Shown here piece after piece: positions 49,601 through 64,000 of a stretch of 64,000 bases of DNA. The notes under the pieces were generated by a model. The model saw only the letters and a list, made by a program, of their open reading frames with translations, did not search any database and was not told where the DNA came from. The position numbers and the translations under genes are program-made. The stretch comes from Mizuhopecten yessoensis (lineage: Eukaryota): the NCBI RefSeq assembly GCF_002113885.1, contig NW_018404492.1, forward strand, positions 7,111,255 through 7,175,254. The letters are read 5' to 3'. Positions within the stretch are counted from its first letter, which is position 1. Every line of letters starts with the position of its first letter.

Positions 49601-52153
49601 AAAAGGACGAAACAGCTTTGTGGCACGGCGTAATTTATTTTTACATACCGTATCTATTACTTAACATTAAAAGTCCAATGCCATGTGCGTCTTTCAAAAC
49701 GGCAATTTATCTTCGTCATTTCCATGATCTTTTCTGTTGACACATGTACAACACACATACCCACGCATTATAAGGACACTGCGTTGAGTTCTAAACTATG
49801 TTTAAATCTGTAATCCAAAAGGTTAAAAAGGTAATGAAGCTTCTAATCTGTTGACAAAATAAGCTTTCGATCCGTTATAATATTGAAATTTACATTTTGT
49901 ACTAATTTTCTCCCTGCTTATGACTACACTGTACACTTGAGATTGACTAACACTGGCGTCACGATATCTACACCGTTACAAAGCATGCATGTAACAACTG
50001 TCCCTCCAGCCAAGCAACGTCTAATTGGATGCCGATAATGGCCGTTTAACACAGCTCTTTAGCTTTTACGTGTTTTTGATCGATTATTGAGATTCATCGC
50101 AGTTCGTGATATCCGTAAAACATCAGCGCTGACCAGCAAATATCGGTAAAATCCTCAGTAGTTGTCATTCTCTAGATATGAAACATGTAATCAAACAATT
50201 ATCAACAGCATCATGGTTAGGAACAAGAACGTTTTTAGAAGTCTATATTGTGTCGCACCAAGGGTTGCCCATGTTTAAAAGCTGCAGACATTCGTATTAG
50301 GTTATATCAGTTACTTAAACACAGTGCGTTTTAACTAATAGTGTCAACACTACATAGCTCAAGGTGAATGTTTGATGGGTGTAACATCATCACCACACCA
50401 CAGCGAAGTGTGCTCTATGCTTGTTTGGTTTGGACTTCATGTCAACAGATATGATCATACGATGATGGTCTTAACTGATGATGTGACCAATCAAAAAAGC
50501 TGATCATGGAAGCACTGGAAATTTACCTCGGTAACATAATTTTTCCAATGAGCATGAAATCTGCATGGGGAAACACACACGAAAGAGATATAGATCCCAA
50601 GTGCCGGGGCAGCAGACCATTGAATTCGACGTCACGCCATGAGCGGTCCCCGATTACTCGAAACCGTATTAACGTAATTACGGAAACTTCCGAACAGTTT
50701 TCGATTTGAATACATTCTCTTGCTGTTATCGTTTTTAACAGACATGTAAATTATTTCCGATAGCTTGAACATGAAACTTATTATATATTATATAAGATAT
50801 TCATGATTTTGTGATGAATAACAGTTATATTTGACGAGCTGGATGAATATTATGATAATTGTAAGAAGCACGATTAAAGAAATGCATCCCACCAGTGATA
50901 TTTATCATGTTATTCCTTCAGAAACCAATAACATTCTGTTCATTTATCATTTTCTTCGAAAAGGGTTGTTGTGGACAGATAATCTATCTCCCGCCAAAAG
51001 ATTTTGAGACAAAAAATGCTATCTAGTGACGTCACAACAAGAAAACGTATGGACATCAGTGATGTCACAATTGACAAACCCTTTGTTGTTATGTATCACA
51101 CTAAACCCCGCTCACTTATTTGTTGGTGTAGAATGAAACTTACAAAAACGGTATACATCACCATCAACAGAATTTAACCATTCCATATGGATATTTGGAC
51201 GTAGTAGATTCGCCTGTATCATGAATGTAATGGCGTGGAAGATTTATACCATGATAACAAATAGCATTTGCATCATATTTACATGCATTCCCTATGACTT
51301 GATATTTTTTTTTTTAGTTTTCATTATTCGTGAGAGTATAGATTGATAAAAAGTTTTTTGACCATACATATGTACGTAGAGTAAATATGTAGCCGATGTA
51401 AATAGCAGTTAAAAAGGGGTCACTGCTACATATGATGTAGATAGGGGTACGTGTATACTCCCATTGTTGTCGTGTTGTCATAAAGAAGATACTTTTACGA
51501 CTCCGTACATGTCAAGATTGTGACGTCAGAAATAATGTTTTACAAATAACATGAAAAACTATACCAACAGCAAGACATGGCTTAAAAAGGTATCGTTAGT
51601 TGCATAGGTAATGCATGTGTTACACCTGAAATGGATATCACATAGACTCACTTTATCTCAATATTGACGCTTTTTAGAAATTCAATTTATAAATAATCCG
51701 TTATGATTGTTTTTTTTACATTCATTACATACATGTACATTGTATACGGTAACAAAATATCTAACCGGACGCTGTCCAGTGCGGAGTTGTAGTAGACATT
51801 GCGTCACCCCGATGTAGGTCCATTGACTCTTTAGGTTATCAATCCTATAATTCACATGAGTCTCACTCACATCCGTTGGTACAAACCTTCCGACATGGAC
51901 ATGTATTGGGTGTGTGCTGGTCACCAGCAAAGTGCGGCGTAACGCTATAGGACTCACACATCTAAATCATTTACTATATGTTATTACTAAGCTTTTGTGT
52001 TAATAGCGTTACAATTTGAAGTTCAGCACTAGTGACAACGGTCTAGATCCACATTTTTGGCGGGTTTAGTGGTACATTGTATATAAGATCGCTACAGTGG
52101 TCTGCTTTTGACAATCGGAAGTTTATAAGCCAAACCGGTGAAGTGGAAGGGGA

Positions 52154-52154
<1 letters not shown>

Positions 52155-52193
<39 letters not shown>

Positions 52194-52194
52194 N
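52155..52194. repeat. Poly-C tract (39 C followed by an ambiguous base)
   Basis: Homopolymer about 14 bp left of the CACTA end; its length is likely assembly-uncertain. Confidence 0.85.
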
Positions 52195-52227
52195 TTCCGC
52201 CACCACACACTACTGCCAAGATTGCCC

Positions 52228-52808
52228 ATTACAAACCCATCAAAAAGCCATTATTTATACTGCCATTACTTTTGTACACCTTTAATGGCCTCTAAAGTAA
52301 TGGCCAAACCCATTACCTGACCATTACTTTCCCATTAAAGTTTCAATTAAGTAATTGCCATCACAAAATAATGGGCCAATTATTAGATTTCAATGTAATG
52401 GGCATTAAAATTTCTGACCTAATGTAATGACCATTACTTTCGAGGTAATGCATTTTTAATGGGCATTACTTGTTTCAACAGTAATGCCATTACTTTGTGG
52501 AGTGTCCATTACATTTCGCCCAAAAAGTTGTAATGGCCATTAGAGGTGCACAAAACTAATAGACCATTGCAATAAAGTACATTTTAATGGCCATTATTGT
52601 TTTTAAATAATGGCCATTACTTTCAAAAATTAAAATTATTTATGGGCATTACATTTTTTACAGTAATGGCCACATTTTGTGATGCATAATTGTAATGGCC
52701 ATTACTTTTACAAAAGTAATGCTATATATTTTTAAGGGCCATTACATGAGGTGCATGTAATGATCATTACTTTGCACATAAAATGTATAATTATTTAATG
52801 CCATTACT
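52228..52808. repeat. CACTA left subterminal repeat array ((G)TAATGGCCATTA(C) palindrome and CCATTA half-sites)
   Basis: Many perfect and near-perfect copies, e.g. gtaatggccattag, taatggccattatt, taatggccattac, taatgggcattac. Confidence 0.9.
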
Positions 52809-52821
52809 TATATGGTCACAC

Positions 52822-53664
52822 AAGTGTGGTCCTGAATAATCAATTTAATTAGTCGACGTCTGGTTGTTTGTCTCTGAAAATCGATTAATCAATCTTTGTT
52901 TTCCATGATTGATTATAGTTTGACTAATTAAGTATTAACAAAAAATAAACTCGGATAGTTACTGTTATTACCGCCGACAGCGAGTTGTTCCTTCTTGGGC
53001 AAAACAAATTGACCGAACGTCCCACACAACGACAACGCTGATTGGCTAGCTGGTCCACCCGATAACCATCAGAACTTGCGTTTCAATGGAAATGCTGCAT
53101 GGCTCAGTCAGTGAGTGACAATATGCATGGCAAACCAGGACAATGCATGGCAAACCAGGACATTCCGGAGATTAAACTCTATGATCATCCAGGTGCTACC
53201 GATTTAAACGTTTGGAAGGTATTGTTCCGTCTTAGCTGGATATAAATAAAACGCTTTGTCGAAAGTTTGGGTTATCTTACAAATAAAATGTTAAGTTTGA
53301 CTGCAGGGTGTCATCAGGTGAATGCCAATCCATCGCGGCATTTCTGAATACGAGATGCAGCTGTCACACTCACAGCATAATGGACCTTGCAAACATCATC
53401 AATTTCATTTCCAAATACATATTTTTCAATAATTATAAGGTTCCGTCAACAAACGTATTGTTTTTGTTTGAATGTTGTGCGTTATTAGCGAAATTCTCTA
53501 ATGTCAGGTTTTCCGCAGAAACGAAAGTGAAAGTAGATTTCGGAAATCGAATATAACCTTAAATTACTGAATTCAAATTCAATTTGATCGATCATTAGTC
53601 GATCATCAGTCACTTGATTGGAAGTGATGATCGAGTATGAATTTACAAGCGATTGCCAACACTA
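52822..53664 (+). mobile_element. Possible decayed internally deleted hAT-type element nested in the CACTA left arm
   Basis: Right end cgattgccaacacta (revcomp TAGTGTTGGCAATCG), TCGA-rich subtermini at both ends, and BED-finger-like remnants (..GATDLNVWK; LDINKTLCRK.GLSYK*) at ~53150-53285. The left TIR is weak and no TSD is seen. Confidence 0.4.
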
Positions 53665-54551
53665 GTAAATCTTGTAATGACAATTTTTTAGATACAATTA
53701 CTTATTGGTATGCAAATTGGGTGTGCAGTCTGATTTAACAGACCTGTGGATCCTGGGATGGAACACATAGCAGTTCAACCTGACCGTCAAGTTTGTATTC
53801 GCCTTGAATCTTGGCAGATAGTGTAGTCTATCACAATCCAGGATATTCTATTTATACTTTTTTATAAAAGAAAAATGTACATAAAAAAGCTTGTCTTGTC
53901 TTTTATTTTAAGAACACAGTACAGTTACACTTGAAACCAATAAAATAATTCTCCATACGGTATTAATGTCTTCAGATAACTTTTTCATATAATCCTATGG
54001 CAAATATTGAAAATGGTCATTTCTGCAGAGGTGTGCTATTGCAGAGTTTACCTTGGATACTGTGACCGTAAAACTGGGACTAAGATCTCTTTAAACATCC
54101 ACATGACCTTGATCTAGCCTAGGGTCATGCAACCTTGAAAATGGAACTACAGTTTCAAGTATTCTGTACATGATTTCCAACAACTCTCCAATGCATATGC
54201 CTATTCAAATAGTCTCAGACTACCGTTTTAGCGAAAATGAGATTCGTAATTTTCAAATAGTCATGTTACCTTGACCTTTGAAACCGGGTCAAGGTATTCT
54301 TCACATATTTTCCAACAAACTGCTAGCCATTGCACTGCTCAATGTTTGCAACCAAGTTTTAAGGTCATCTGCATTAGAAAGTTGTTGGAAATCTTGTGAC
54401 GAATACTTGGACCCAGTTTCTAGGTCACAGGTTTAAAGGTCAGGGTCACATGACCGTTTGAAAATTAGGAACATCATTTTGTCTAAAACGGTAGACTTTT
54501 TAATTATAGGGCATAATAATGCATTAGAAATTTCTCCCCAGAAATTTAAGA

Positions 54552-54770
54552 AGGCATGTCGGAATCGAAGTCACAGCTGACATTTTTACAACTTCATAAT
54601 CTTTAAACATTAATTTATAGTATTTGGTGCTAATACCCATTTTAACAGTTTTATACTAAACTATCTAAGGCATGTTTTTTTCACAAATGAAGGCGTGACA
54701 AATATGGAATTTATTCAGGAATTAAGGCACGTCATTTCCGAAACATATGCATGTCATTTCTGACATGCCT
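54552..54770. mobile_element. MITE nested in the CACTA element (Kolobok-like AGG...CCT ends)
   Basis: TIR aggcatgtcggaa / ttctgacatgcct. TTAA follows the right end; the left flank ttaaga is degenerate. Confidence 0.5.
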
Positions 54771-55346
54771 TTAAGACCGTCCTGGGGAGGATAGTGTAAA
54801 TTTTCCCCCAAACACCGAAACAATAATTAAAATGTACTCCAACTTGAACTACAAAATCATAAAATGCTATATACAAGTGCACGTGTTGGTCAAATTTGGG
54901 CAATCGATTACTCTCTAAAGAGTAGAATATTAGTATTACTCGCAATTAGGGCCTACAAAAAAGTGTTGTTTCCCCTTCCTGACCGAGCATATTTTTTTGG
55001 GGACATTTTCAAAGAAGAACTACAGTAATCAAGTGTGAATGTTTCTTACAAATAACCATAAAAAGGGTAAGTTTTTACTAAAAAATTGCCACAAACCTTA
55101 ACCAGGGACCCACAGGCCTAAACATTCAAATTAAAAATATCATGCACGCATGGAAAGGCAAGTCTTATACCAGGTGTACAACTGTCAGCCTGTCATTATA
55201 CATGCATGTAATTATTTGTCAACATACACCTTGGTTCGGACGGCCAGGGACCAGATGATTTCCTTTGAAAAAAAAATGCCTTCCAGCTGGAGTGGGATAT
55301 TTTTAAATGGAATATATAGACCCTTATATTAATGATAATTCATTAT

Positions 55347-56944
55347 TTACTGATCATCATAAATATAACTTTGAATTTTTTTCTTTAGAAGGTTTCCAAA
55401 TTTCTCCCGACTTACAACTGATAGGCATCCAAATTTTCCCAGTTTAGGATCCAGTTTTAAAAGTTCATTTTCTTTCGGTACCTCCCAGATACAGTAACGC
55501 ATGTCTGGATTTACCTCTATATCTGTGGAGCTAAGTCTCAAGTTGTCTGTGTTATCTGCTACAACTCTGCACTCTTCAGTGGTCATCTTGCCATCGGTAT
55601 TTAACTTTCCACAACTCTTCACTGAGTTCCTTACTAGAAAAGCAGTTTCTGTGACACATTTGACTCCCCAGAATTTTTTTTTGTTTGCCCACTCCATTAG
55701 AACAAATGACCGAAACTGAATCTCGCGTTTTGAGCACTTAGATTCATTGTTGGGCAGGGTTTGTTTTTCATTACGTCGTTTCTTTTTTTCTATAACTGGT
55801 AAATCTTCGTCATTACTGATATCAATGTGTAATTCATGATCATCATCCGCTGCAGCAGATCCTTTGGGTTGGATTGTTTGTAGTCTCTCTGGGGATCCAT
55901 CATTCCTAGGCCTCTTCACATTTTTTGATTTTGATGGTAGATGATCAACATCAATCGAGCTCGAGGATTGCTTATTGGCATCAGAATCTGTATCAGTAGA
56001 ACATGAACTTTGTTTAAACATTTCATCCAACTTCCTGCTTGTGTTTGGCGTAGCCTTCTTTTTCTTTACTTCCACTTTTTCAAGTTTTTTTGTCCAGAAA
56101 AGTATCATCTGTTTCACACCAGCATTTTTTATAGTTGTTGCACCATCTGGTGAAACAGCTGGCAAATCTACATCTATTTTCGCGTCCATGTCTTTACTTT
56201 TCAAAACAACATTTGAATACATATCGTCTTCCTTACCTAGAAAGATACCCGTTCCTACTATGACACTGGTACTGTCACAACTGTGTTTCAATTTTACCAA
56301 ATCACCTGGTTTCAAATCACACAAACCCAAGTCATTTTTTTTACGCTTTTCACTTAATTCAGCTTTGTGTTGTGCGAGGAATTTCCGTCTTTTTCCTGAA
56401 TTCAAGTCTTTTAAGTACTTTCTTCTATTTTGTAAATGTTCTCCGACTCGCCTCCAAATTTCTGACCTTTTTGATTTGAGGGCAGGGACATGGTTTTCAA
56501 TAATTGTATGGAATTCTTCTTTTTTTCGACTTGTGATGTCTTGTAATGTTATGGGATTTTTCCATAGCTTTGTTGCTTTCATTGTATCCTTCATCAAGCT
56601 ATTAAAATATGTTTGAGCAGAATTACTTTTCGTTCTGATAGCTTTCTTTCGTAGCATTTCATCTACATTAAATTTTGTTATAGGTGTCAGGATGGAACTA
56701 ACACTACTGGTCGAAGATTTCTCAGTTTCACTACTACTGGTATCAAGATCTGTAGTGCATGAAGTCTCGGTGGTTTCTGATTCTAAGCCTGGTGATTCCT
56801 TATCTGCGACTTGATCCATGTAATCTGCTCCCTGTTTCAAATGTATTAGGTTTCGTACAATCCTCCGATCACCGAAACTTTTGAAAAGGTCCTTGATATC
56901 CCCTTCAGTGAACGTATATATATCTTCAGCTGTAATTTGATTTT
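55347..56944 (-). CDS. CACTA accessory (TnpA-like) protein, main exon: SAM-like N-terminus, basic helical region, TNP1-like motif
   Basis: The frame of the 497-aa ORF stays open 34 codons upstream of its TTG (NQITAEDIYTFTEGDIKDLFKSFGDRRIVRNLIH) up to acceptor ttttctttgcag|AA at 56945|56944 (phase 1). It lies inside the CACTA ends and is K/R-rich with NLS-like KKKRR. Confidence 0.85.
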
Positions 56945-57807
56945 CTGCAAAGAAAATGTATAAAATATTGTCAGGATATGTAGTCCCCCGGAAGGTGATT
57001 TTTTAAATAATGAACTACAGTATGTCTCATTTAGTCTCAACAGGGTTTTTGCCCCTCATTTTTATCAATTCAGGGAAAATTTCACTGGTATATTAGTCAT
57101 AACGGAATTCCAAATCTCAACCTAATTGGTTAACAAATACAAAAGTTGTCTGCTTTGAGACAACTGAAAATTTGCGTCTTGACGTTCCATTGACGCCATA
57201 GTTTATAGTAAAATTGACAATATATTAAGAGTATCGGTACGTTTTATGCCCTCATTGTGAATCCCAGTAAAAAGCAACCAAATCTGGTTGCAACTTGCCT
57301 AAATTTCATTTGATTTTGTTTGGATCCATATTTTTTTAAACCTGACCTTTTTTAAGTTAAATTTTCTACCTTTGAGATAAATTTGGACATAATTTCGATG
57401 TTTCACGCTGATCTGCCTCTGATTTGACACTTCTGGTTCTCCCTACCATCGATTCGAAAATATACCGCGATACAAGAGTAGTTACGTCCCCTGGATTCAC
57501 CGAACCGGCGGGTAGCAGACGCTCGCAAAGTATTGAATGGTTTTTCTTACAATTAAATGTATGTCCTCAAAGGTTATATATTTGTTTATATCCTGATGTA
57601 AAAGTTTCTACTGGGGTGTACACTCGTCCCTCGTAATTTCGCGGAAATTGTTAAGTACCGCGATACAGTAGGGCTAAACATGGATTTGAACATTTTTCAA
57701 ACTAAAAGTAAAGATCTATGCCAATCTCAACATGCATTTAATTACGGAAACACACAGATCAGTATTGTTACAGATTTGAGTACGGCCTGCAAACGAATGA
57801 TACCAAC

Positions 57808-57847
57808 CTTCCATCGCAAGTTTGCCCTCCGACGAGAGATTCTCCAT
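57808..57847 (-). CDS. Accessory gene exon 1 (MENLSSEGKLAME + G)
   Basis: ATG at 57847 (alternative in-frame ATG at 57868), 40 nt, donor GAAG|GTTGGT at 57808|57807 in phase 1. Joins exon 2 as G+AA=Glu, giving a continuous SAM-like sequence; intron is 863 bp. Confidence 0.62.
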
Positions 57848-57868
57848 CGTAATATGAATGTTCTGCAT

Positions 57869-58008
57869 CCTCAGAATCCCGCGAAAGTACTGCAGAGCGG
57901 AAAAGGCGCAACCACGTGATGTTTGTTTTGAGATGTGATGTTGTGCGAGATTTGAATACACAGCTTCCGGTATGCCGGCAAGGTTTCAGCAACAACGTTA
58001 ACGCTCGT
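57869..58008. promoter_or_regulatory. Putative bidirectional promoter between the divergent accessory gene and transposase
   Basis: Short gap between inferred divergent start codons, CpG-containing, with palindromic E-box CACGTG (57913-57918) and ETS-like CTTCCGG (57964-57970). Confidence 0.5.
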
Positions 58009-58193
58009 ATGCCACGGCGAAAAATAATATGTCCTTGCTGCATATGCAGATCATGTTTAGATCCTGTAGATCATCGCACTGCAAAGTCTCACATCTCGAA
58101 ATATGGCATACAACATTCGACATCTCCGGGTAAAACCGTGCTTTCGCATCATAGCGGGAAAGTTGCAAATCATGGCGGACAAGTTGCAAAAAA
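58009..58193 (+). CDS. Transposase exon 1 (Cys/His transposase-associated N-terminal domain)
   Basis: MPRRKIICPCCICRSCLDPVDHRTAKSHISKYG has the CPCxxC...H..YG pattern of CACTA N-terminal domains. Donor AA|GTAAGT at 58193|58194 is phase 2 and joins in frame (AA+A=Lys, then ATG 59799) across a 1604-bp intron. An alternative in-frame ATG is at 57919. Confidence 0.8.
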
Positions 58194-59164
58194 GTAAGTA
58201 AAGTGTTGTATATGGGATGATAGTTTGACATCTGTCCCGGGTTGGGTACTGTCAAATTTTTGGGTACACCCATGTCAAACGTTGGATGCATTTAAAACCA
58301 TTTTTCCGAATTTTCGTTCAATTTTGAAAGATATGAGCGTCGACAGAATAAAGACGGACAATTTTGAAAAATACATTGTAATACAGAAAAGGTTTTCTCC
58401 CATACCAAGTGGCAGTGTGTGTTTTCTCACTCTCAGCTCATTAGTAAGCATTCCCTACTATTGGTAAACATTTTTGTTTCTTAACATATGTCGGTAAAAA
58501 ACACCTATACATAGCTATATAGGCATATATATATATGTATTTGAAAGTTGTAGGGACACGGCTGTAAGAGTTACTTTTGAAAAGTTTCAATGTCATTGGG
58601 TCTCATCAAATATTGTTTCTTACATATTGAAAGTTACAGTATTTGACTTATTTTTAAGTAATAGCCTGAATAGTCAAATATCACACAAACTTTAATTTGA
58701 GATGCATGCTCTGTTCAACTTTTTGCATAGCTCCAGATCTAGAGGATCTCAGGTGGGCCTCTTGTTTTTTAAAAAAATCGTTGAAAATTTTAAAACTTTA
58801 ATTTCTCAACCTTGTTACAAATTATTTAGATGGTTCATTTTATCTATTTCAGAACGACACAGCTTCCCATGGCCACTGGTCCTACTAGTCCTTCTGTTTT
58901 GGAATTGGAAGACTCAGAAGTTGAAAGGTATAACAATATTTTTCTGACATTATGAAGATGTACTTCATCTGTCTGCGACACATCGGTTTTCCAGACTTTA
59001 CTTCGTTTCAATAATATTTGACCTCTGTAGACCTATTTTCTACTAAATTGTCGTAGGATCATGAAAATTGAGCTTTGTGATGAGCAATGGATGTCAAACT
59101 TATGCAATATTATTTTAATCAAATTTCCAGTTGGGGCAAATTGAACAACAATAATACAGCCTCT

Positions 59165-59330
59165 TGTTAAATATGGTCATAAAGCATATCAAATCGAACA
59201 GGATGATGAGAACTGTATTTTGCAAGACCATTTGTCACCATAGACTGAAATAGGGGAGGGGAGTCGGGTCAAAATAATTTGTTTTTAAATATATCAAATC
59301 AAACAGGATGATGAATACTGCATTTTGCAA
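59165..59330. repeat. Two diverged satellite/HINE-type monomer fragments in the transposase intron
   Basis: Repeated atatcaaatc(g/a)aacaggatgatga motif with an intervening gggtcaaa, similar to bivalve HINE internal repeats. Confidence 0.4.
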
Positions 59331-59434
59331 TTTTCCCTGTACACTGTATATAAATATGTATTTACAAATTTGCACTGCAACTTATTTGGATGTCAGGACT
59401 CGACAAACCTGACATATATGCATGTAGATGATCG

Positions 59435-59742
59435 TACATGAGTGTCCATGTAATATTGGGATTTATTAAACAAGTTAAATAATTGTATATGTCACGAGCC
59501 TTTAGGCGATTAATTTATTTAACAAGTTTAATAAATTCAATATTACATGGACACAAGTGTAAAATTCTATTTATCACATAACTCATAATTATGAGTAAAT
59601 AGGCCAAAAAACTCAAATTATCTCCCTAAAGGAACGACAATTTTCTTTGATGGCTTCATTCAATTAGGACGTCACAATGCCTTTATGACACAGTGTGGCT
59701 TACGATATGTATGACATGGAAAATGAGCCAGTTATGTAATGA
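59435..59742. mobile_element. Hairpin-ended (Crypton-like) element nested in the transposase intron
   Basis: Palindrome 59435-59561 centred on CGAGCC-TTTA-GGCGA; IR tttatcacataac (~59570) / gttatgtaatgaa (~59731). Confidence 0.55.
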
Positions 59743-59797
59743 AGGAATCTTAATATACATTACAATTGTCTTAAAATATTTCCTTTAAATTTTTCAG

Positions 59798-62624
59798 AAT
59801 GGATTCTGATGATAGCATGGTGGAGGATACTTTCTCAGGGTCAGATACCGGTACCAATGTCAATGTTGACAACGAACTTGAAGATGCAGATGGGGCTGTT
59901 AGTTCATCTGTTCTGACTCCATCCAAGCCTGAGGAATGTGATGATCAAGATGTAGATTCAACTGTGTCTTTGAGTGATGAGGAATTTGACATCGATGAGG
60001 AATTTGACACCGACGAAAATGAAGTAGTTAACAATTACAACATTAGTGATACCTGGTCATTTACATATGACAAAACATTGTATACTAGTGGAATAGCTTG
60101 TGAAATGATGCCAGGTTCGAACATATCAGTGTTGCAATGGTTAGCTATGAATTTTTATACATTCTCATCACACTCTATGAGCAAAAATTCTTTTTCTTGC
60201 AACCTAAACATTCAGAAGATATTACATACCTCTAACAAAGACTGCTCGATGTCATTGGAGTTGCCTTCAAATTATCGCAAAGCAAGGAAAATGGTGGACC
60301 AATATAGAGTAAAGAAACTCAATTTCAAATGTTGCGTTAATGACTGTATAGTGTACAAAAACAATGCAGGTACTAATCCGAAGTGCCCAATGTGCGATTC
60401 GACTAAAACGAAAAATTTTGTTTATCTACCAATTGCACCAAGAATTGCACGAATTTATGGTGAAAAGAACTTGGCTAAATTGATTCAGGTACATGGACAC
60501 AGATTGGAACATAATTTAAAACCCGACATGTGGGATATTCAAGACTCACCTGCATGGCAAGAAGTGTATGGTGAGGATGGACATTTTAAAGGGGACCATA
60601 CAGGGTTATCCTTTGCATTTGAGGCAGATGGTGTTAGCCCATACCACAACCTGAGAATTTCATATTCAATGACACCTATAATGTTGACTTTGTTGAACCT
60701 TCCAAGAAACATTCGAAATCTGTTTGGGAACATTTTCTTAGTTGGTATAGTTCCTGGAACGGGTCGGTCAGAAGCATTAAAATTAGATCCCTATCTGGAG
60801 ATTATGGTCGATGAACTACTTTATCTTACAGAATGTCGGACGATTGACAGTTACAAAAATGCTCCTGTAAGTGTGAAACTCAAAGTACTTCTGTTTGTTC
60901 TTGACTACCCTGGACTATCCAAAGTATTTTCTCAACACGGAAGTGGCAGCTTAGCTGTGTGTCACTGGTGTTTCGTCAGAGGACAACATTGCAAACATCT
61001 CGACAAGGTAATATATTTGTCGAATAGGTCATACTTGGCCTTCAGTGATCCATTACGCTTGGACAATAAACATTTTCTCTGTAAGAAAACTGACTTTTCT
61101 GTGGCACCCAAAGAAAGAAAGAAAGATGAAGAGAAGAATTTCCGAAATGCTTATGATACTGCGGACAAAATGGTGAATAAAAAGTTAGTAGCAACAGCAA
61201 CAGGCTGCAAGAGTTCATATGTACTAGAAAAGCTCCCAGGTCATGATAGAGTAAAGGAATCAATTCCAGATGCATGCCACACAATTAAGGATTTAGTCCA
61301 GAATATTATGAATTTGTTGGTGAGAAAGAGTGATGTGAAAAAAATATCTGAAGCAGAATTTAATTTAGGTAGATTATCAGTGAACATTACATCAGACAAC
61401 CAAATACAAACCGATCATGGAATAAACAACAATAATCATAAGAAACGAAAGACATGTTCTGAGATTGATCTACCATATGTTCTTACAAATGATGAAATTC
61501 AGCGTGCCGATGAAAGAGCCAAGAATATTCGTGTTCCACACGGTTTCGGTTTAAAGCCCTCTCCGTTCATTTCGAAAAACAGAGGTGCTTTGAAAAGCCA
61601 CGACTGGAAGCAGATTGCTACACACGGGATTCTTAAATACTGCTTACGTGGGTGTCTTTCAGAAGATTGTAGAACTACATTGTTTACATTATTGGATAGC
61701 ATTTCACGGATTTGTTCTGAATATGTGTCTATTGATGACTTGGCTGAAATGGAATGTGAACTAAATAGAGCACTTGCCTTCCTAGAGCGAGATTTTCCAT
61801 TGTCACTGCAAAACATAACGACCCATATTCTTCACCATATAGTAAATGGCATAAGGCGCTACGGACCTGTATATGGAACATGGATGTACAATTTTGAAAG
61901 ATTTAATTCATGGATATGTAAGAGAGTCTTCAATAAACGTCACCCAGAAGCAACAGTAATGGAGACATTTGCAGTTTTTGATTGGTGTAATTTTATGATT
62001 TCAACAGGAAGGATGCCCTCCAATATTGTAGCTATGACAAATCAGTTTAATGATGATTTGGAATGCCAAGAAATAAAATGTGATGGTGATCATGAACAGG
62101 CATACGAGTCTGGTATTGAAATCTGTTTGACTGGCAGGGAGTTACAGTTTTTACACCATGCACTTGCAAAAGAAGATCTTGTGTGTTGTGGCAACTGCAC
62201 TATCAGGAAAGCTTCGTCTCACAAAGTGACACACTCAGGAACTGGGCGTTGCATATATTATACAACTTCTGCTAAGTCGGTGCGAGCATCAGCTCTAACA
62301 AAGTCTTGTTATGTTTGTTTTGAAACCACTAGAGGAAAACCAAACAGGAAGTTGTCTACAGGTCAATTTGTGAATTTTGGCATCATTTTAGCTTTCTATC
62401 ACCATATAATAGAAGGTGGTGTACAAGCCACAGTGTCTTGTGTAGAAACATATACCAATGCTGAATGTGACAGTACCAAACTGTGGAAATGCCCCATTGA
62501 CTCCGAGAAGTCTAAGCTCTTCATTCACGTCAAAAAATTATCCAAACCGCTTGTGACTGCAGAAGAAGATGGTTGTTTATGGTTCTTGGATGGTGGGAGG
62601 TTACCTTTTCACAGTTCAATTTAA
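59798..62624 (+). CDS. CACTA TnpD-like DDE transposase, main exon (941 aa from ATG 59799; ~1003 aa with exon 1)
   Basis: Uninterrupted ORF with CMC/CACTA motifs: CCVNDCIVY..CPMC, WDIQDSPAW, EADGVSPY (first D), LLNLP, LDYPG (second D) followed by CHWC, DACH, LKSHDW, HILHH..YGP..WMYNFERFN (E). Preceded by acceptor ttttcag|A (59797|59798). Confidence 0.93.
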
Positions 62625-62978
62625 CTTGGTGAGGCCAAAAAAAATCTTTGTTTGGCATTGACGGACTAACTGGAGCTGGGATTGCATATTTTATATGCAG
62701 AATTATAAGGATTAAGATGAATGATTATTTTCTGTTATGTAATGGACCTGTTTGATCTTTTCTCTGATTTTAAAATTGATATGGATGTATGCAATATCAT
62801 TACAAATATATAATGATCACAATATGTGTATTGGGTTTTAACCAACAAATTCATCAAATGAAAATGAATTCGTCTGAAAATTATATTAAATTGTCTTTGA
62901 TTCGAAATGTATATATAAAATGTGTGTACAAATGAATGTTATAGATATATATTGTTATTTTTTTGTTTTGGTCACCAG

Positions 62979-63120
62979 GGCCCGAGATCATGAAACAATC
63001 TTAGACTTAAGTCTATTTTAATCTTAACTTGAAACTTAAATAACATCAGAATTAATCATCGTAACTATAGTTAAGTCTTAAGTCTGAATTAAGGCTAAGA
63101 TCACTTCATGATCCCAGGCC
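62979..63120. mobile_element. ~140-bp MITE nested in the CACTA right arm (GGCC termini, PIF/Harbinger-like)
   Basis: Left ggcccgagatcatgaaacaatcttagacttaa versus revcomp of right ggcctgggatcatgaagtgatcttagccttaa; CAG lies to the left, and the TSD is not preserved on the right. Confidence 0.6.
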
Positions 63121-63237
63121 AAAAGCTAATCAAAGTCTGTTGACTGGCCTGAAACATAAAGTAGCAAACAAACATTGCTAAACAATGATACAATGAGCAT
63201 TAATACATTAATTTAAGGCCAACAATTAGTAGTTGTC

Positions 63238-63712
63238 ATGGCCATTACAAGAAAAATGTAATGGGCATTACATAAAACCAATAATTAGTAATGGTCCTTA
63301 CACTGGAATCAAAAAATGTAATGGGCATTACATAAAGCCCTCAGTTAGTAATGGCCATTACATTAAGATAATAATTTGTTATAGTCATTAAATGGAAAAT
63401 GTAATGGCCATTACATAAAGCAATAATTAGTAATGGCCATTACAATATGATTAGCTGAATTATAATGGCCATTACAACCATGGATAGTGGCCATTAATAA
63501 ATATGAAACATGAAATAATGGCCATTATATTTTTCATGCCCATTAAAATGAAATAAGTAATAGGAAATAAACTAAAATTTGGGAAAATAATGGCCATTAC
63601 ATTACTAAACATGAGGTTTGTCAAAAAAAAAGAAACGAGAAATAATGGCCATTTGTAATGGAAACTGTGTTTTTAATGGGTTTGTAATGGGTTTGTAATG
63701 GTATTTTAATGG
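63238..63712. repeat. CACTA right subterminal repeat array (same palindromic motif)
   Basis: Many copies of (g)taatggccatta(c) and taatgggcattac, then 11-bp gtttgtaatgg half-site repeats next to the TIR. Confidence 0.9.
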
Positions 63713-64000
63713 CTTTGCTGTGCAATAGTGACATATCAAAATCTACCAAACGTTTACATTGTTTTAAAGTTCAACAATTAACTATTCAAATTACTCAGAG
63801 CCGCTGTATTAATCCGGAATGATTTTCGGTGGGGATTACAATGGTATGAAACACTTGCTGATTGGGTAATTTAGTTGTGTGAGTCCTATATAGATTGTTT
63901 ACAATAGGTAAAGACAGGGAACATATACTCACCTTCCAACATGGACATGAATCGGATGTGAACTGGTCACTATCAAAGTGTGCGTAACGCAATATAGATT

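What the first reader, a model, noticed from the sequence alone, without database searches (positions are those of the whole stretch)
52208..63730. Intact two-gene animal CACTA transposon with plant-style hallmarks and head-to-head gene layout
Seen: exact CACTA/TAGTG ends, a 3-bp ACA TSD, subterminal repeat arrays and two uninterrupted spliced genes facing away from each other about 160 bp apart. Known: maize En/Spm makes TnpA and TnpD from one alternatively spliced same-strand transcript, and CACTA ends with 3-bp TSDs are best described in plants. Inference: this is a potentially active animal (likely bivalve) CACTA family whose transposase and end-binding partner are co-expressed from one bidirectional promoter. 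That would make it a compact two-component transposition system that could be reconstituted.
Basis: partly seen in the sequence, partly recalled or inferred. Interest (0 to 1): 0.85.

Follow-up and report, generated by a model that had tools for sequence, protein, structure and literature searches.

The report
Intact two-gene CACTA transposon in scallop
An 11.5-kb cut-and-paste DNA transposon of the CACTA/EnSpm kind sits structurally intact in a scallop genome, with its transposase gene and a second gene of unknown function placed head-to-head only 140 bp apart; it is a real mobile element and an unusual variant of a known kind, not a new kind.

Summary
Window 52208-63730 is a bounded CACTA/EnSpm transposon in what is almost certainly Mizuhopecten yessoensis. 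It has CACTA..TAGTG ends. The 3-bp ACA duplication is confirmed by uninterrupted copies of the dispersed repeat it landed in. About 22 palindromic TAATGGSCATTA sites lie only in the two subterminal regions.

It carries two divergent spliced genes:
- A 3-exon transposase of about 1028 aa, with a zinc-finger exon, Transposase_21 and DUF4218.
- A 2-exon accessory gene (ORF2) of about 552 aa.

Their ATGs are 140 bp apart, across a CpG-rich patch. The same head-to-head layout recurs at 16 diverged loci in this genome. It also recurs in an Argopecten irradians element with CACTA ends and a TAG duplication.

- The family is tiny: one intact copy, one roughly 98% identical interrupted copy, and fragments.
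- Two raw RNA-seq runs are nearly silent.
- Transcription start sites are unmapped.
- ORF2 has no Pfam family or significant fold match, so "end-binding partner" remains inference. Weak leads point to BEN/Myb-like DNA-binding helices.

Animal CACTA elements are already known. The new points are the layout and the ORF2 family. Other first-reader notes in this scan touch the same stretch (palindromic motif, SAM-like ORF2 start).

The parts
52205..52207 (.). Left copy of the 3-bp target-site duplication (ACA)
   Evidence: Read directly. Paralogous uninterrupted repeat copies carry a single ACA at this site.
52208..63730 (+). Whole CACTA/EnSpm element, 11,523 bp
   Evidence: CACTA..TAGTG ends. The alignment to the C76631 copy starts exactly at 52208. 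Empty-site logic supports both boundaries.
52208..52220 (+). Left terminal inverted repeat (CACTACTGCCAAG), short and imperfect
   Evidence: The same CACTACTG-type terminus occurs in the Argopecten element and at C4882 and C1714.
52221..52760 (.). Left subterminal array of palindromic TAATGGSCATTA sites and CCATTA half-sites
52823..53670 (.). Nested copy of an unrelated high-copy dispersed repeat. It is shared with the C76631 copy and absent from the C4556 relative.
55347..56944 (-). ORF2 (accessory gene) exon 2: 531 codons plus stop. The reading frame is open from the splice acceptor.
   Evidence: The residues upstream of the first ATG in this exon are conserved in P0001, P0002 and genomic relatives.
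56945..57807 (-). ORF2 intron, 863 bp, GT..AG on the minus strand
   Evidence: Contig of run X3 joins 56944 to 57808, depth 10.2, with 255 or more letters on each side.
57808..57868 (-). ORF2 exon 1, coding part: ATG at 57868, 20 codons plus 1 nt, in frame with exon 2 by arithmetic
   Evidence: The start codon is inferred.
57869..58008 (.). 140-bp region between the two ATGs: putative bidirectional promoter, GC 49%, CpG observed/expected 1.31
   Evidence: against an element average of GC 36% and CpG o/e 0.63. No start sites are mapped.
58009..58193 (+). Transposase exon 1: zinc-finger-like N-terminus (CxCCxCxxC..H..KYG), followed by a GTAAGT donor
   Evidence: 58% identity over 36 aa to the N-terminus of Argopecten transposase P0011. 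Weak Pfam Transpos_assoc hit, E 0.009. The same peptide is found in relatives at the same position and strand and at the start of P0013 and P0018.
58194..58852 (+). Transposase intron 1 (predicted only)
   Evidence: GTAAGT donor, pyrimidine tract plus AG acceptor, frame preserved (arithmetic). No read evidence.
58853..58927 (+). Transposase exon 2, 75 nt, acidic/serine-rich linker
   Evidence: Its 3' end is joined to 59798 in an X3 contig, with 28 letters on the short side and depth 2. The 5' boundary is predicted.
58928..59797 (+). Transposase intron 2, 870 bp, GT..AG
59798..62624 (+). Transposase exon 3: 941 codons plus stop, carrying Transposase_21 (aa 248-439) and DUF4218 (aa 638-728)
   Evidence: Pfam E 1.6e-21 and 3e-11. 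Invariant D277, D369, C388xxC391 and H676xxxH680 are retained.
63236..63717 (.). Right subterminal array of the same palindromic sites and half-sites
63718..63730 (-). Right terminal inverted repeat (reverse complement CACTATTGCACAG)
63731..63733 (.). Right copy of the 3-bp target-site duplication (ACA)

Best explanation
This is a structurally complete, autonomous-type CACTA/EnSpm cut-and-paste transposon of scallops. It is inserted into a copy of another dispersed repeat.

Shown:
- CACTA..TAGTG termini.
- A 3-bp ACA target duplication.
- Dense palindromic subterminal repeats.
- A Transposase_21/DUF4218 transposase gene.
- A second gene (ORF2) in head-to-head orientation, linked to the transposase in this way across a diverged clade and in a second scallop genus.

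Inferred mechanism:
- The DDE transposase (about 1028 aa from three exons, with an N-terminal zinc finger) cleaves at the CACTA ends and integrates with a 3-bp staggered cut.
- ORF2 (about 552 aa from two exons) has a conserved helical domain, a small beta-barrel and a C-terminal alpha/beta domain joined by disordered linkers. It acts as the accessory factor, analogous to but not homologous with maize TnpA. Most likely it binds the palindromic TAATGGCCATTA sites and helps bring the ends together or regulates the element. I put this role at about 45%.
- Both genes are driven from the 140-bp CpG-rich stretch between their start codons.
For: - Ends and TSD.
- Second locus with a different flank, 97.4-98.5% identical.
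- Motif arrays, 40 matches against 0.91 expected.
- Transposase_21 and DUF4218. Invariant catalytic-region residues kept.
- Zinc-finger first exon conserved in relatives and in annotated bivalve transposases.
- Two splice junctions with GT..AG on the right strands.
- Transposase and ORF2 relatives are paired divergently at 16 of 16 co-occurring loci in this genome.
- Argopecten irradians element on L073 (2208-12981): CACTACTG ends, TAG duplication, the same layout and similar subterminal motifs.
- ORF2 is a real, long-conserved protein. It has 112 profile hits and AF2 domains at pLDDT 90-98.
- Weak DNA-binding leads for its helical domain: Myb and BEN structures at Z 5-6 and nearest named language-model clusters being BEN.
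- CpG-rich patch between the ATGs.
Against: - Activity is unproven. There is only one intact copy and one interrupted copy about 2% diverged. There are no MITE derivatives, and the right end has no other copy in the assembly.
- Only 1 and 2 reads laid out of 12.4 million read in each of two raw RNA-seq runs.
- The spliced contigs carry the insertion breakpoints of the sister copy, so they do not show expression of this copy.
- One X3 contig runs unbroken from 57808 to 58570, across transposase exon 1. The two transcripts may therefore overlap rather than start from a clean shared promoter.
- ORF2 has no Pfam family. All fold matches are below the tool's stated noise level.
- ORF2's N-terminal module also occurs in Haliotis and in an ENA metagenome contig (L082, organism not on record) with no transposase within 10 kb.
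- The third catalytic residue (E) was not assigned.
Confidence: 0.8

Rival explanations
1. The element is structurally intact but no longer mobile. On this reading it is a silenced or slightly crippled relic whose open frames have simply not yet decayed.
For: - The two copies differ by 1.5-2.6%.
- The sister copy carries nested insertions, seen as loose ends at 56614/56618 and 60580 and as N gaps.
- Other family members are decayed: C4556 at 77% nt with many stops, and C4242 and C4397 with stops.
- The raw RNA runs are almost empty.
- The terminal inverted repeat is imperfect.
Against: - 1028 and 552 codons are open across five exons, with intact splice sites.
- All residues invariant among 22 homologs are kept.
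- Both ends and both motif arrays are intact.
- It transposed after acquiring the nested repeat.
Confidence: 0.4
2. ORF2 does not bind the ends. The transposase's own zinc finger reads the subterminal repeats, and ORF2 is a chromatin or regulatory factor that counters host silencing or controls expression, for example through its Tudor/KOW-like barrel.
For: - The beta-barrel at 206-294 resembles Tudor, KOW, PWWP and SH3 folds at Z 5-6.4.
- Transposases of the family keep an N-terminal CxCxxC..H finger.
- The ORF2 N-terminal module occurs away from any transposase in Haliotis and in an ENA metagenome contig (L082, organism not on record), and within an axolotl protein annotated as a host gene isoform, whose neighbourhood I did not examine.
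- Maize TnpA is itself also a regulator (PMC1636069, background section).
Against: - The top structural neighbours of the helical domain, though not significant, are mostly DNA-binding helical domains, including four BEN-DNA or BEN structures.
- A palindromic site suits a dimeric dedicated binder.
- ORF2 is strictly linked to the transposase across 45-50% diverged lineages.
Confidence: 0.3
3. This is a domesticated, single-copy host gene pair derived from a transposon, not a mobile element.
For: Both genes are intact and low-copy. The window's exact proteins were not returned by either protein-collection search.
Against: - Exact termini with a 3-bp duplication inside another repeat.
- A second copy at another locus with a different flank.
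- Many diverged paralogous elements, some with stops.
- An Argopecten element with its own TSD at an unrelated site.
Confidence: 0.02
4. ORF2 is a captured host gene or part of a different nested element, and only by accident lies next to the transposase.
For: It has no homology to plant TnpA. Its N-terminal module occurs in other protein contexts.
Against: The four-module ORF2 is paired head-to-head with the transposase at 16 of 16 co-occurring diverged loci and in Argopecten. The zinc-finger exon lies about 1 kb from ORF2 exon 2 in the window, in C76493 and in C5242.
Confidence: 0.03

Closest known systems
Maize En/Spm and other plant CACTA elements (Tam1, CAC1, Caspar-type)
   Same: CACTA..TAGTG termini, 3-bp TSD, subterminal repeat arrays, a Transposase_21/DUF4218 transposase with an N-terminal zinc-finger-like region, and a second element-encoded protein (background from PMC4158355 and PMC1636069; tested).
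   Different: - The plant proteins come from one transcription unit on one strand by alternative splicing. Here there are two separate genes head-to-head, 140 bp apart.
- ORF2 shows no similarity to TnpA, and no Pfam family is hit.
- The subterminal motif is a perfect palindrome.
- The host is an animal.
SmTRC1 and related animal/fungal 'TRC' CACTA-superfamily elements (DeMarco et al. 2006, PMC1636069)
   Same: An animal element with a Transposase_21 transposase and extra, fast-evolving, non-TnpA-like proteins.
   Different: - SmTRC1 has CCC-type termini, 2-bp duplications and same-strand alternative splicing.
- The scallop element has true CACTA ends, a 3-bp TSD and a divergent second gene.
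PIF/Harbinger two-ORF transposons
   Same: A DDE transposase plus a separate accessory gene needed for function. This is from general knowledge and was not tested here. The analogy is functional only.
   Different: - It is a different transposase superfamily with a different TSD and termini.
- The Harbinger accessory protein is a recognised Myb/SANT-like protein, whereas ORF2's helical domain matched Myb-like folds only at Z 5-6.
MuDR (maize Mutator autonomous element)
   Same: Two element-encoded genes on opposite strands. This is from general knowledge.
   Different: - MuDR genes are convergent and driven from the two TIRs. Here the genes diverge from the element's centre.
- It belongs to an unrelated transposase superfamily.
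CACTA elements flanking the Takifugu sex-determining supergene (PMC9191631)
   Same: Animal CACTA transposase with a conserved catalytic core.
   Different: No TIRs or intact structure could be shown there. Here both ends, the TSD and both genes are defined.

Membership tests
CACTA/EnSpm superfamily (CMC group) of DNA transposons | Termini 5'-CACTA ... TAGTG-3' | tested here: met
   52208-52212 and 63726-63730. The same termini occur in Argopecten, C4882 and C1714 relatives.
CACTA/EnSpm superfamily (CMC group) of DNA transposons | 3-bp target-site duplication | tested here: met
   ACA on both sides. Uninterrupted paralogous repeat copies carry one ACA. The Argopecten element has TAG/TAG.
CACTA/EnSpm superfamily (CMC group) of DNA transposons | Transposase with the Transposase_21 (tnp2) domain, usually followed by DUF4218 | tested here: met
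   PF02992 at E 1.6e-21 (77 bits, cutoff 28.6) and PF13960 at E 3e-11.
CACTA/EnSpm superfamily (CMC group) of DNA transposons | Intact DDE catalytic triad | tested here: inconclusive
   D277 (ADGVSP) and D369 (LDYPG), plus CxxC and HxxxH, are invariant in 22 bivalve homologs and present here. I could not assign the third residue. The reference paper (Yuan and Wessler 2011) was not held.
CACTA/EnSpm superfamily (CMC group) of DNA transposons | N-terminal transposase-associated zinc-finger domain (Pfam Transpos_assoc) | tested here: inconclusive
   Exon 1 peptide hits PF13963 at E 0.009, 16.6 bits, below the 27.7-bit cutoff. The peptide is clearly conserved at the N-termini of bivalve transposases.
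CACTA/EnSpm superfamily (CMC group) of DNA transposons | Subterminal repeat arrays | tested here: met
   About 22 sites, confined to the two subterminal regions; 40 strand-matches against 0.91 expected.
En/Spm-type gene organisation | TnpA-like second protein (Pfam Transposase_24) made with TnpD from one same-strand, alternatively spliced unit | tested here: not met
   ORF2 is on the opposite strand with its own intron. It matches no Pfam family, even at E 10.
BEN domain (PF10523) for the ORF2 helical domain | Sequence match to the BEN profile, or a clear BEN fold | tested here: inconclusive
   BEN (PF10523) does not appear in the Pfam results for 49 family members. BEN structures (BEND3, BANP, Bsg25A, BEND6) appear at Z 5.1-5.4, tied with Myb, homeodomain and integrase-N folds and below the noise level. 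The nearest named language-model clusters are BEN at 0.80-0.83, a lead only.
SAM domain for the ORF2 N-terminus (other first-reader note s1-519447) | Five-helix SAM fold spanning exon 1 and the start of exon 2 | not tested
   Exon 2 alone gives three confident helices at residues 5-43 and no Pfam SAM hit.

The most novel reading that the evidence does not exclude
A currently mobile animal CACTA element in which a previously undescribed, dimeric BEN/Myb-like accessory protein reads palindromic subterminal sites. The protein is co-expressed with the transposase from a 140-bp CpG-rich bidirectional promoter. This would be a compact two-component system that could be reconstituted as a new animal transposon tool. 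Its accessory-protein module would also have been recruited into host proteins in gastropods and amphibians.
Probability: 0.2. Interest if true: 0.7.

Novelty: new variant of a known kind. Interest (0 to 1): 0.5.

Why it matters
CACTA elements are well understood only in plants. In the animal reports I read (PMC1636069, PMC9191631), the termini were non-CACTA with 2-bp duplications, or could not be found at all.

This element, with its Argopecten relative, gives a fully delimited animal example. Both ends, the 3-bp duplication, the binding-site arrays and both genes with their introns are defined.

It also shows that the two-protein logic of En/Spm is kept in animals with an unrelated second protein and a different, head-to-head gene layout. 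That makes two questions directly testable with a small set of defined parts: whether CACTA transposition needs an accessory end-binding factor, and what that factor is.

If the element is active, it could be a new tool for mollusc genetics.

Tried and rejected
- Pfam on ORF2, its pieces and 49-80 relatives gave nothing above noise.
- A PDB sequence profile search with the helical domain gave nothing below E 0.5.
- Foldseek against PDB, on the whole ORF2 model and on the helical domain, gave no match at E 0.001 or better.
- VIA-align wide gave only Z 6.4 or less, below the tool's noise level.
- ESM Atlas by shape gave TM 0.40 or less. Atlas by features found no usable hit for the C-terminal domain.
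- Complex prediction of an ORF2 88-300 homodimer returned 'no answer' (score 0.00). This is not evidence either way.
- A search for other copies of the right end found none.
- The raw RNA runs X22 and X23 gave 1-2 reads each, so expression level and start sites could not be read. The library type of X1 and X3 is not on record. X1 looks like DNA because its coverage is even across the introns.
- The Haliotis locus and the ENA metagenome locus (organism not on record) that carry the ORF2 N-terminal module have no transposase within 10 kb.
I therefore could not fetch whole relatives to read both ends and TSDs of the 16 diverged elements.
- Joined (spliced) protein models were deliberately not built, searched or folded. 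All searches were exon by exon.
- The domesticated-gene and captured-gene readings were rejected on the multi-locus and TSD evidence.
Full report
**Where we are.** The window is G000:C1165:7111255-7175254 of a 988-Mb assembly in 82,659 contigs. A protein that NCBI names as Mizuhopecten yessoensis LOC110450989 (P0013) matches another contig of this genome at 99% over its main exon. The organism is therefore almost certainly the Yesso scallop.

**Checking the observation: ends and target duplication.**
- The element starts with CACTA at 52208 and ends with TAGTG at 63730. ACA lies immediately outside on both sides.
- The terminal inverted repeat is very short, with 8 of the first 9 bases matching and similarity fading after that.
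- Both flanks belong to one and the same dispersed repeat family.
- Uninterrupted copies of that repeat (L076, L078, L079) read CCGCCATC-ACA-TATCAAAATC with a single ACA. The window reads CCGCCACC-ACA-[element]-ACA-TATCAAAATC. This paralogous empty site fixes both boundaries and the 3-bp duplication.
- A second copy on contig C76631 aligns from exactly the CACTA base, at 97.4-98.5% identity over 52208-60580, and has an unrelated flank. The element has therefore inserted at two or more loci.
- A poly-C run with a single N lies 13 bp left of the duplication. I left the N as it is.

**Subterminal arrays.**
- The palindrome TAATGGSCATTA, allowing one mismatch, gives 40 strand-matches at about 22 sites.
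- All sites fall within 52396-52744 and 63236-63654. The expectation for the whole window is 0.91.
- The half-sites CCATTA/TAATGG occur 25 and 24 times in the terminal 600 bp on each side, and 5 times in the inner 10.3 kb.

**The transposase gene.**
- The 941-codon ORF at 59799-62624 carries Transposase_21 (E 1.6e-21) and DUF4218 (E 3e-11).
- A contig of public run X3 joins 58927 to 59798, with GT..AG and the acceptor one base before the ATG.
- Upstream, 58009-58193 encodes a CxCCxCxxC..H..KYG peptide, followed by a GTAAGT donor.
- That peptide is 58% identical over 36 residues to the N-terminus of an annotated Argopecten transposase. It gives a weak Transpos_assoc hit (E 0.009, below cutoff).
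- It starts three annotated bivalve transposases, from Argopecten, Mizuhopecten and Solemya.
- It is found at the same position and strand in diverged relatives.
- A 75-nt middle exon (58853-58927) keeps the frame. Its 5' boundary, and so intron 1, is predicted only.
- The model is 61+1+24+1+941 = 1028 codons, like the 1031- and 1045-aa annotated relatives.
- D277, D369, CxxC and HxxxH, which are invariant in 22 homologs, are all present. I could not assign the third catalytic residue.

**The second gene, ORF2.**
- The 497-codon ORF at 55347-56840 on the minus strand has no Pfam family.
- An X3 contig joins 56944 to 57808, skipping 863 bases, with GT..AG on the minus strand, depth 10.2 and long flanks.
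- The frame is open from the acceptor. The 35 residues upstream of the first ATG in this exon are conserved in relatives, for example the FxxxDIxDLFKxFxDR motif. Translation therefore must start in the upstream exon, most simply at ATG 57868.
- This gives about 552 codons.
- That stretch has GC 49% and CpG observed/expected 1.31. The element as a whole has 36% and 0.63, and the coding exons have 0.53-0.61.
Everything was done exon by exon.

**The layout is a family trait.**
- In this genome, transposase relatives at 44-53% identity and ORF2 relatives lie on the same contig, 2-7 kb apart and divergent, at 16 of 16 co-occurring loci.
- In Argopecten irradians, the ORF2 homolog P0001 lies 1.7 kb from a divergent Transposase_21/DUF4218 gene.
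- That Argopecten element (L073:2208-12981) ends in CACTACTGTCA inverted repeats, is flanked by TAG/TAG, and has TAATGGCAATTA-type subterminal sites.
- CACTACT termini with CCATTA arrays are also seen at C4882 and C1714.
- Transposase homologs at 43-58% identity come from Argopecten, Ylistrum, Mizuhopecten, Solemya and Mya.

**What ORF2 is.**
- A profile search of 1.84 billion representatives found 112 relatives. The named ones are from Argopecten, Haliotis and Mercenaria, plus an axolotl protein labelled 'KIAA1958 homolog isoform X3'. The last 190 residues of that protein match ORF2's first 190 residues (E 3e-26).
- AlphaFold on an 80-sequence alignment gives four confident parts joined by two disordered linkers:
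  - short N-terminal helices,
  - a helical domain at 90-205 (pLDDT 95-98),
  - a beta-barrel at 212-295,
  - an alpha/beta domain at 405-530.
- The barrel resembles Tudor, KOW and SH3 folds at Z 6.4 or less.
- The helical domain, folded alone at pLDDT 94, has its best neighbours at Z 5-6. These are Myb-like, BEN, integrase-N and homeodomain DNA binders. All are below the noise level the tool states.
- Foldseek and the Atlas shape search found nothing.
- The nearest named language-model clusters are BEN at 0.80-0.83, which is only a lead.
- DNA binding by ORF2 is therefore plausible and fits a palindromic site, but it is inference. The transposase zinc finger is an equally available reader of the repeats.
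- The N-terminal module also occurs at a Haliotis locus and at an ENA metagenome locus (organism not on record) without any transposase within 10 kb.

**Activity and expression.**
- The family is very small. It has this intact copy, the roughly 98% identical C76631 copy broken by assembly gaps, a 77% relic at C4556, and fragments.
- The loose ends at 56614/56618 and 60580 indicate nested insertions in the C76631 copy.
- The right end has no other copy in the assembly.
- An 850-bp unrelated repeat nested at 52823-53670 is shared by both copies and missing from C4556. The element therefore moved after acquiring it.
- Two raw RNA-seq runs gave 1 and 2 reads out of 12.4 million read each.
- The spliced X3 contig runs into the insertion breakpoint at 56614, so it comes from the interrupted sister copy. 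It shows that the family's splice sites work, not that this copy is expressed.
- The same contig is continuous from 57808 to 58570, across transposase exon 1. The two transcripts may overlap at their 5' ends. Start sites are unmapped.

**Comparison with what is known.**
- CACTA elements are defined by CACTA/TAGTG ends, a 3-bp duplication, a DDE transposase and an ORF2 of unclear function (PMC4158355).
- They have been reported in animals since SmTRC1, which has 2-bp duplications, CCC termini and same-strand alternative splicing (PMC1636069).
- EnSpm is routinely listed in bivalve repeat tables (PMC8905726).
- Fish CACTA transposases are known without defined ends (PMC9191631).
- By every structural test I could run, this element is a member of the superfamily.
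- It departs from the En/Spm model in its gene organisation (two divergent genes rather than one spliced unit), in its unrelated ORF2 family, and in its perfectly palindromic site.
- I could not consult Repbase or Dfam, so a deposited equivalent cannot be excluded.

**Verdict.** The element is a new variant of a known kind, of moderate interest.

Noticed in passing
window 51941-52207 and 63731-63893: The element sits inside a copy of a high-copy dispersed repeat with hundreds of candidate matches. In this copy a roughly 34-base poly-C run plus one N (52161-52194) replaces about 27 bases of the repeat consensus, 13 bp from the insertion site.
   Followed up: partly
window 52823-53670: A copy of another high-copy repeat of about 850 bp, 82-90% identical to dozens of loci, is nested in the element's left arm. 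The C76631 copy shares it, and the older C4556 relative lacks it.
   Followed up: partly
window 54156-54497: A MITE-like set of inverted repeats lies in the non-coding left arm, with arms of 44-66 nt at 83-84% complementarity.
   Followed up: no
window 56614-56618 and 60580 (sister copy on G000:C76631, L070/L072): Contigs of runs X1 and X3 leave the window sequence at these points. At 56614-56618 the two sides overlap by 5 bp, and the foreign ends look like inverted repeats (TGTAATATATTC / TGTAGTGAATTC). This suggests a nested transposon with a 5-bp duplication inside ORF2 of the sister copy. The assembly has N gaps at the matching places.
   Followed up: partly
P0042 (axolotl, NCBI 'KIAA1958 homolog isoform X3'), residues 394-574: The C-terminal 190 residues of this annotated host-gene isoform are homologous to the first 190 residues of ORF2 (E 3e-26). 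This could be an exonised or domesticated transposon module, or an annotation artefact. I did not pursue any human sequence.
   Followed up: partly
L081 (Haliotis rubra, P0035) and L082 (ENA contig, P0043): The ORF2 N-terminal module (the short N-terminal helices plus the helical domain) occurs here, twice in the Haliotis protein. No transposase lies within 10 kb and no TAATGGSCATTA sites are present.
   Followed up: partly
L073:8043-8135 (Argopecten irradians element): The zinc-finger first exon of the Argopecten transposase contains an in-frame stop. NCBI's model P0009 starts after it, so that copy is probably defective.
   Followed up: no
window 55347-56944 and 59798-62624 versus 57300-58200: The coding exons are CpG-depleted (observed/expected 0.53-0.61), while the rest of the window is at 0.98 and the inter-gene patch at 1.1-1.3. 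This pattern would fit past germline methylation of the transcribed bodies with an unmethylated promoter.
   Followed up: no
window 59509-59558: In run X1 a contig replaces 48 bases here with 12 other letters, and k-mer depth rises 2-3 fold at 59500-59699. This suggests a short repeated or variable segment inside transposase intron 2.
   Followed up: no
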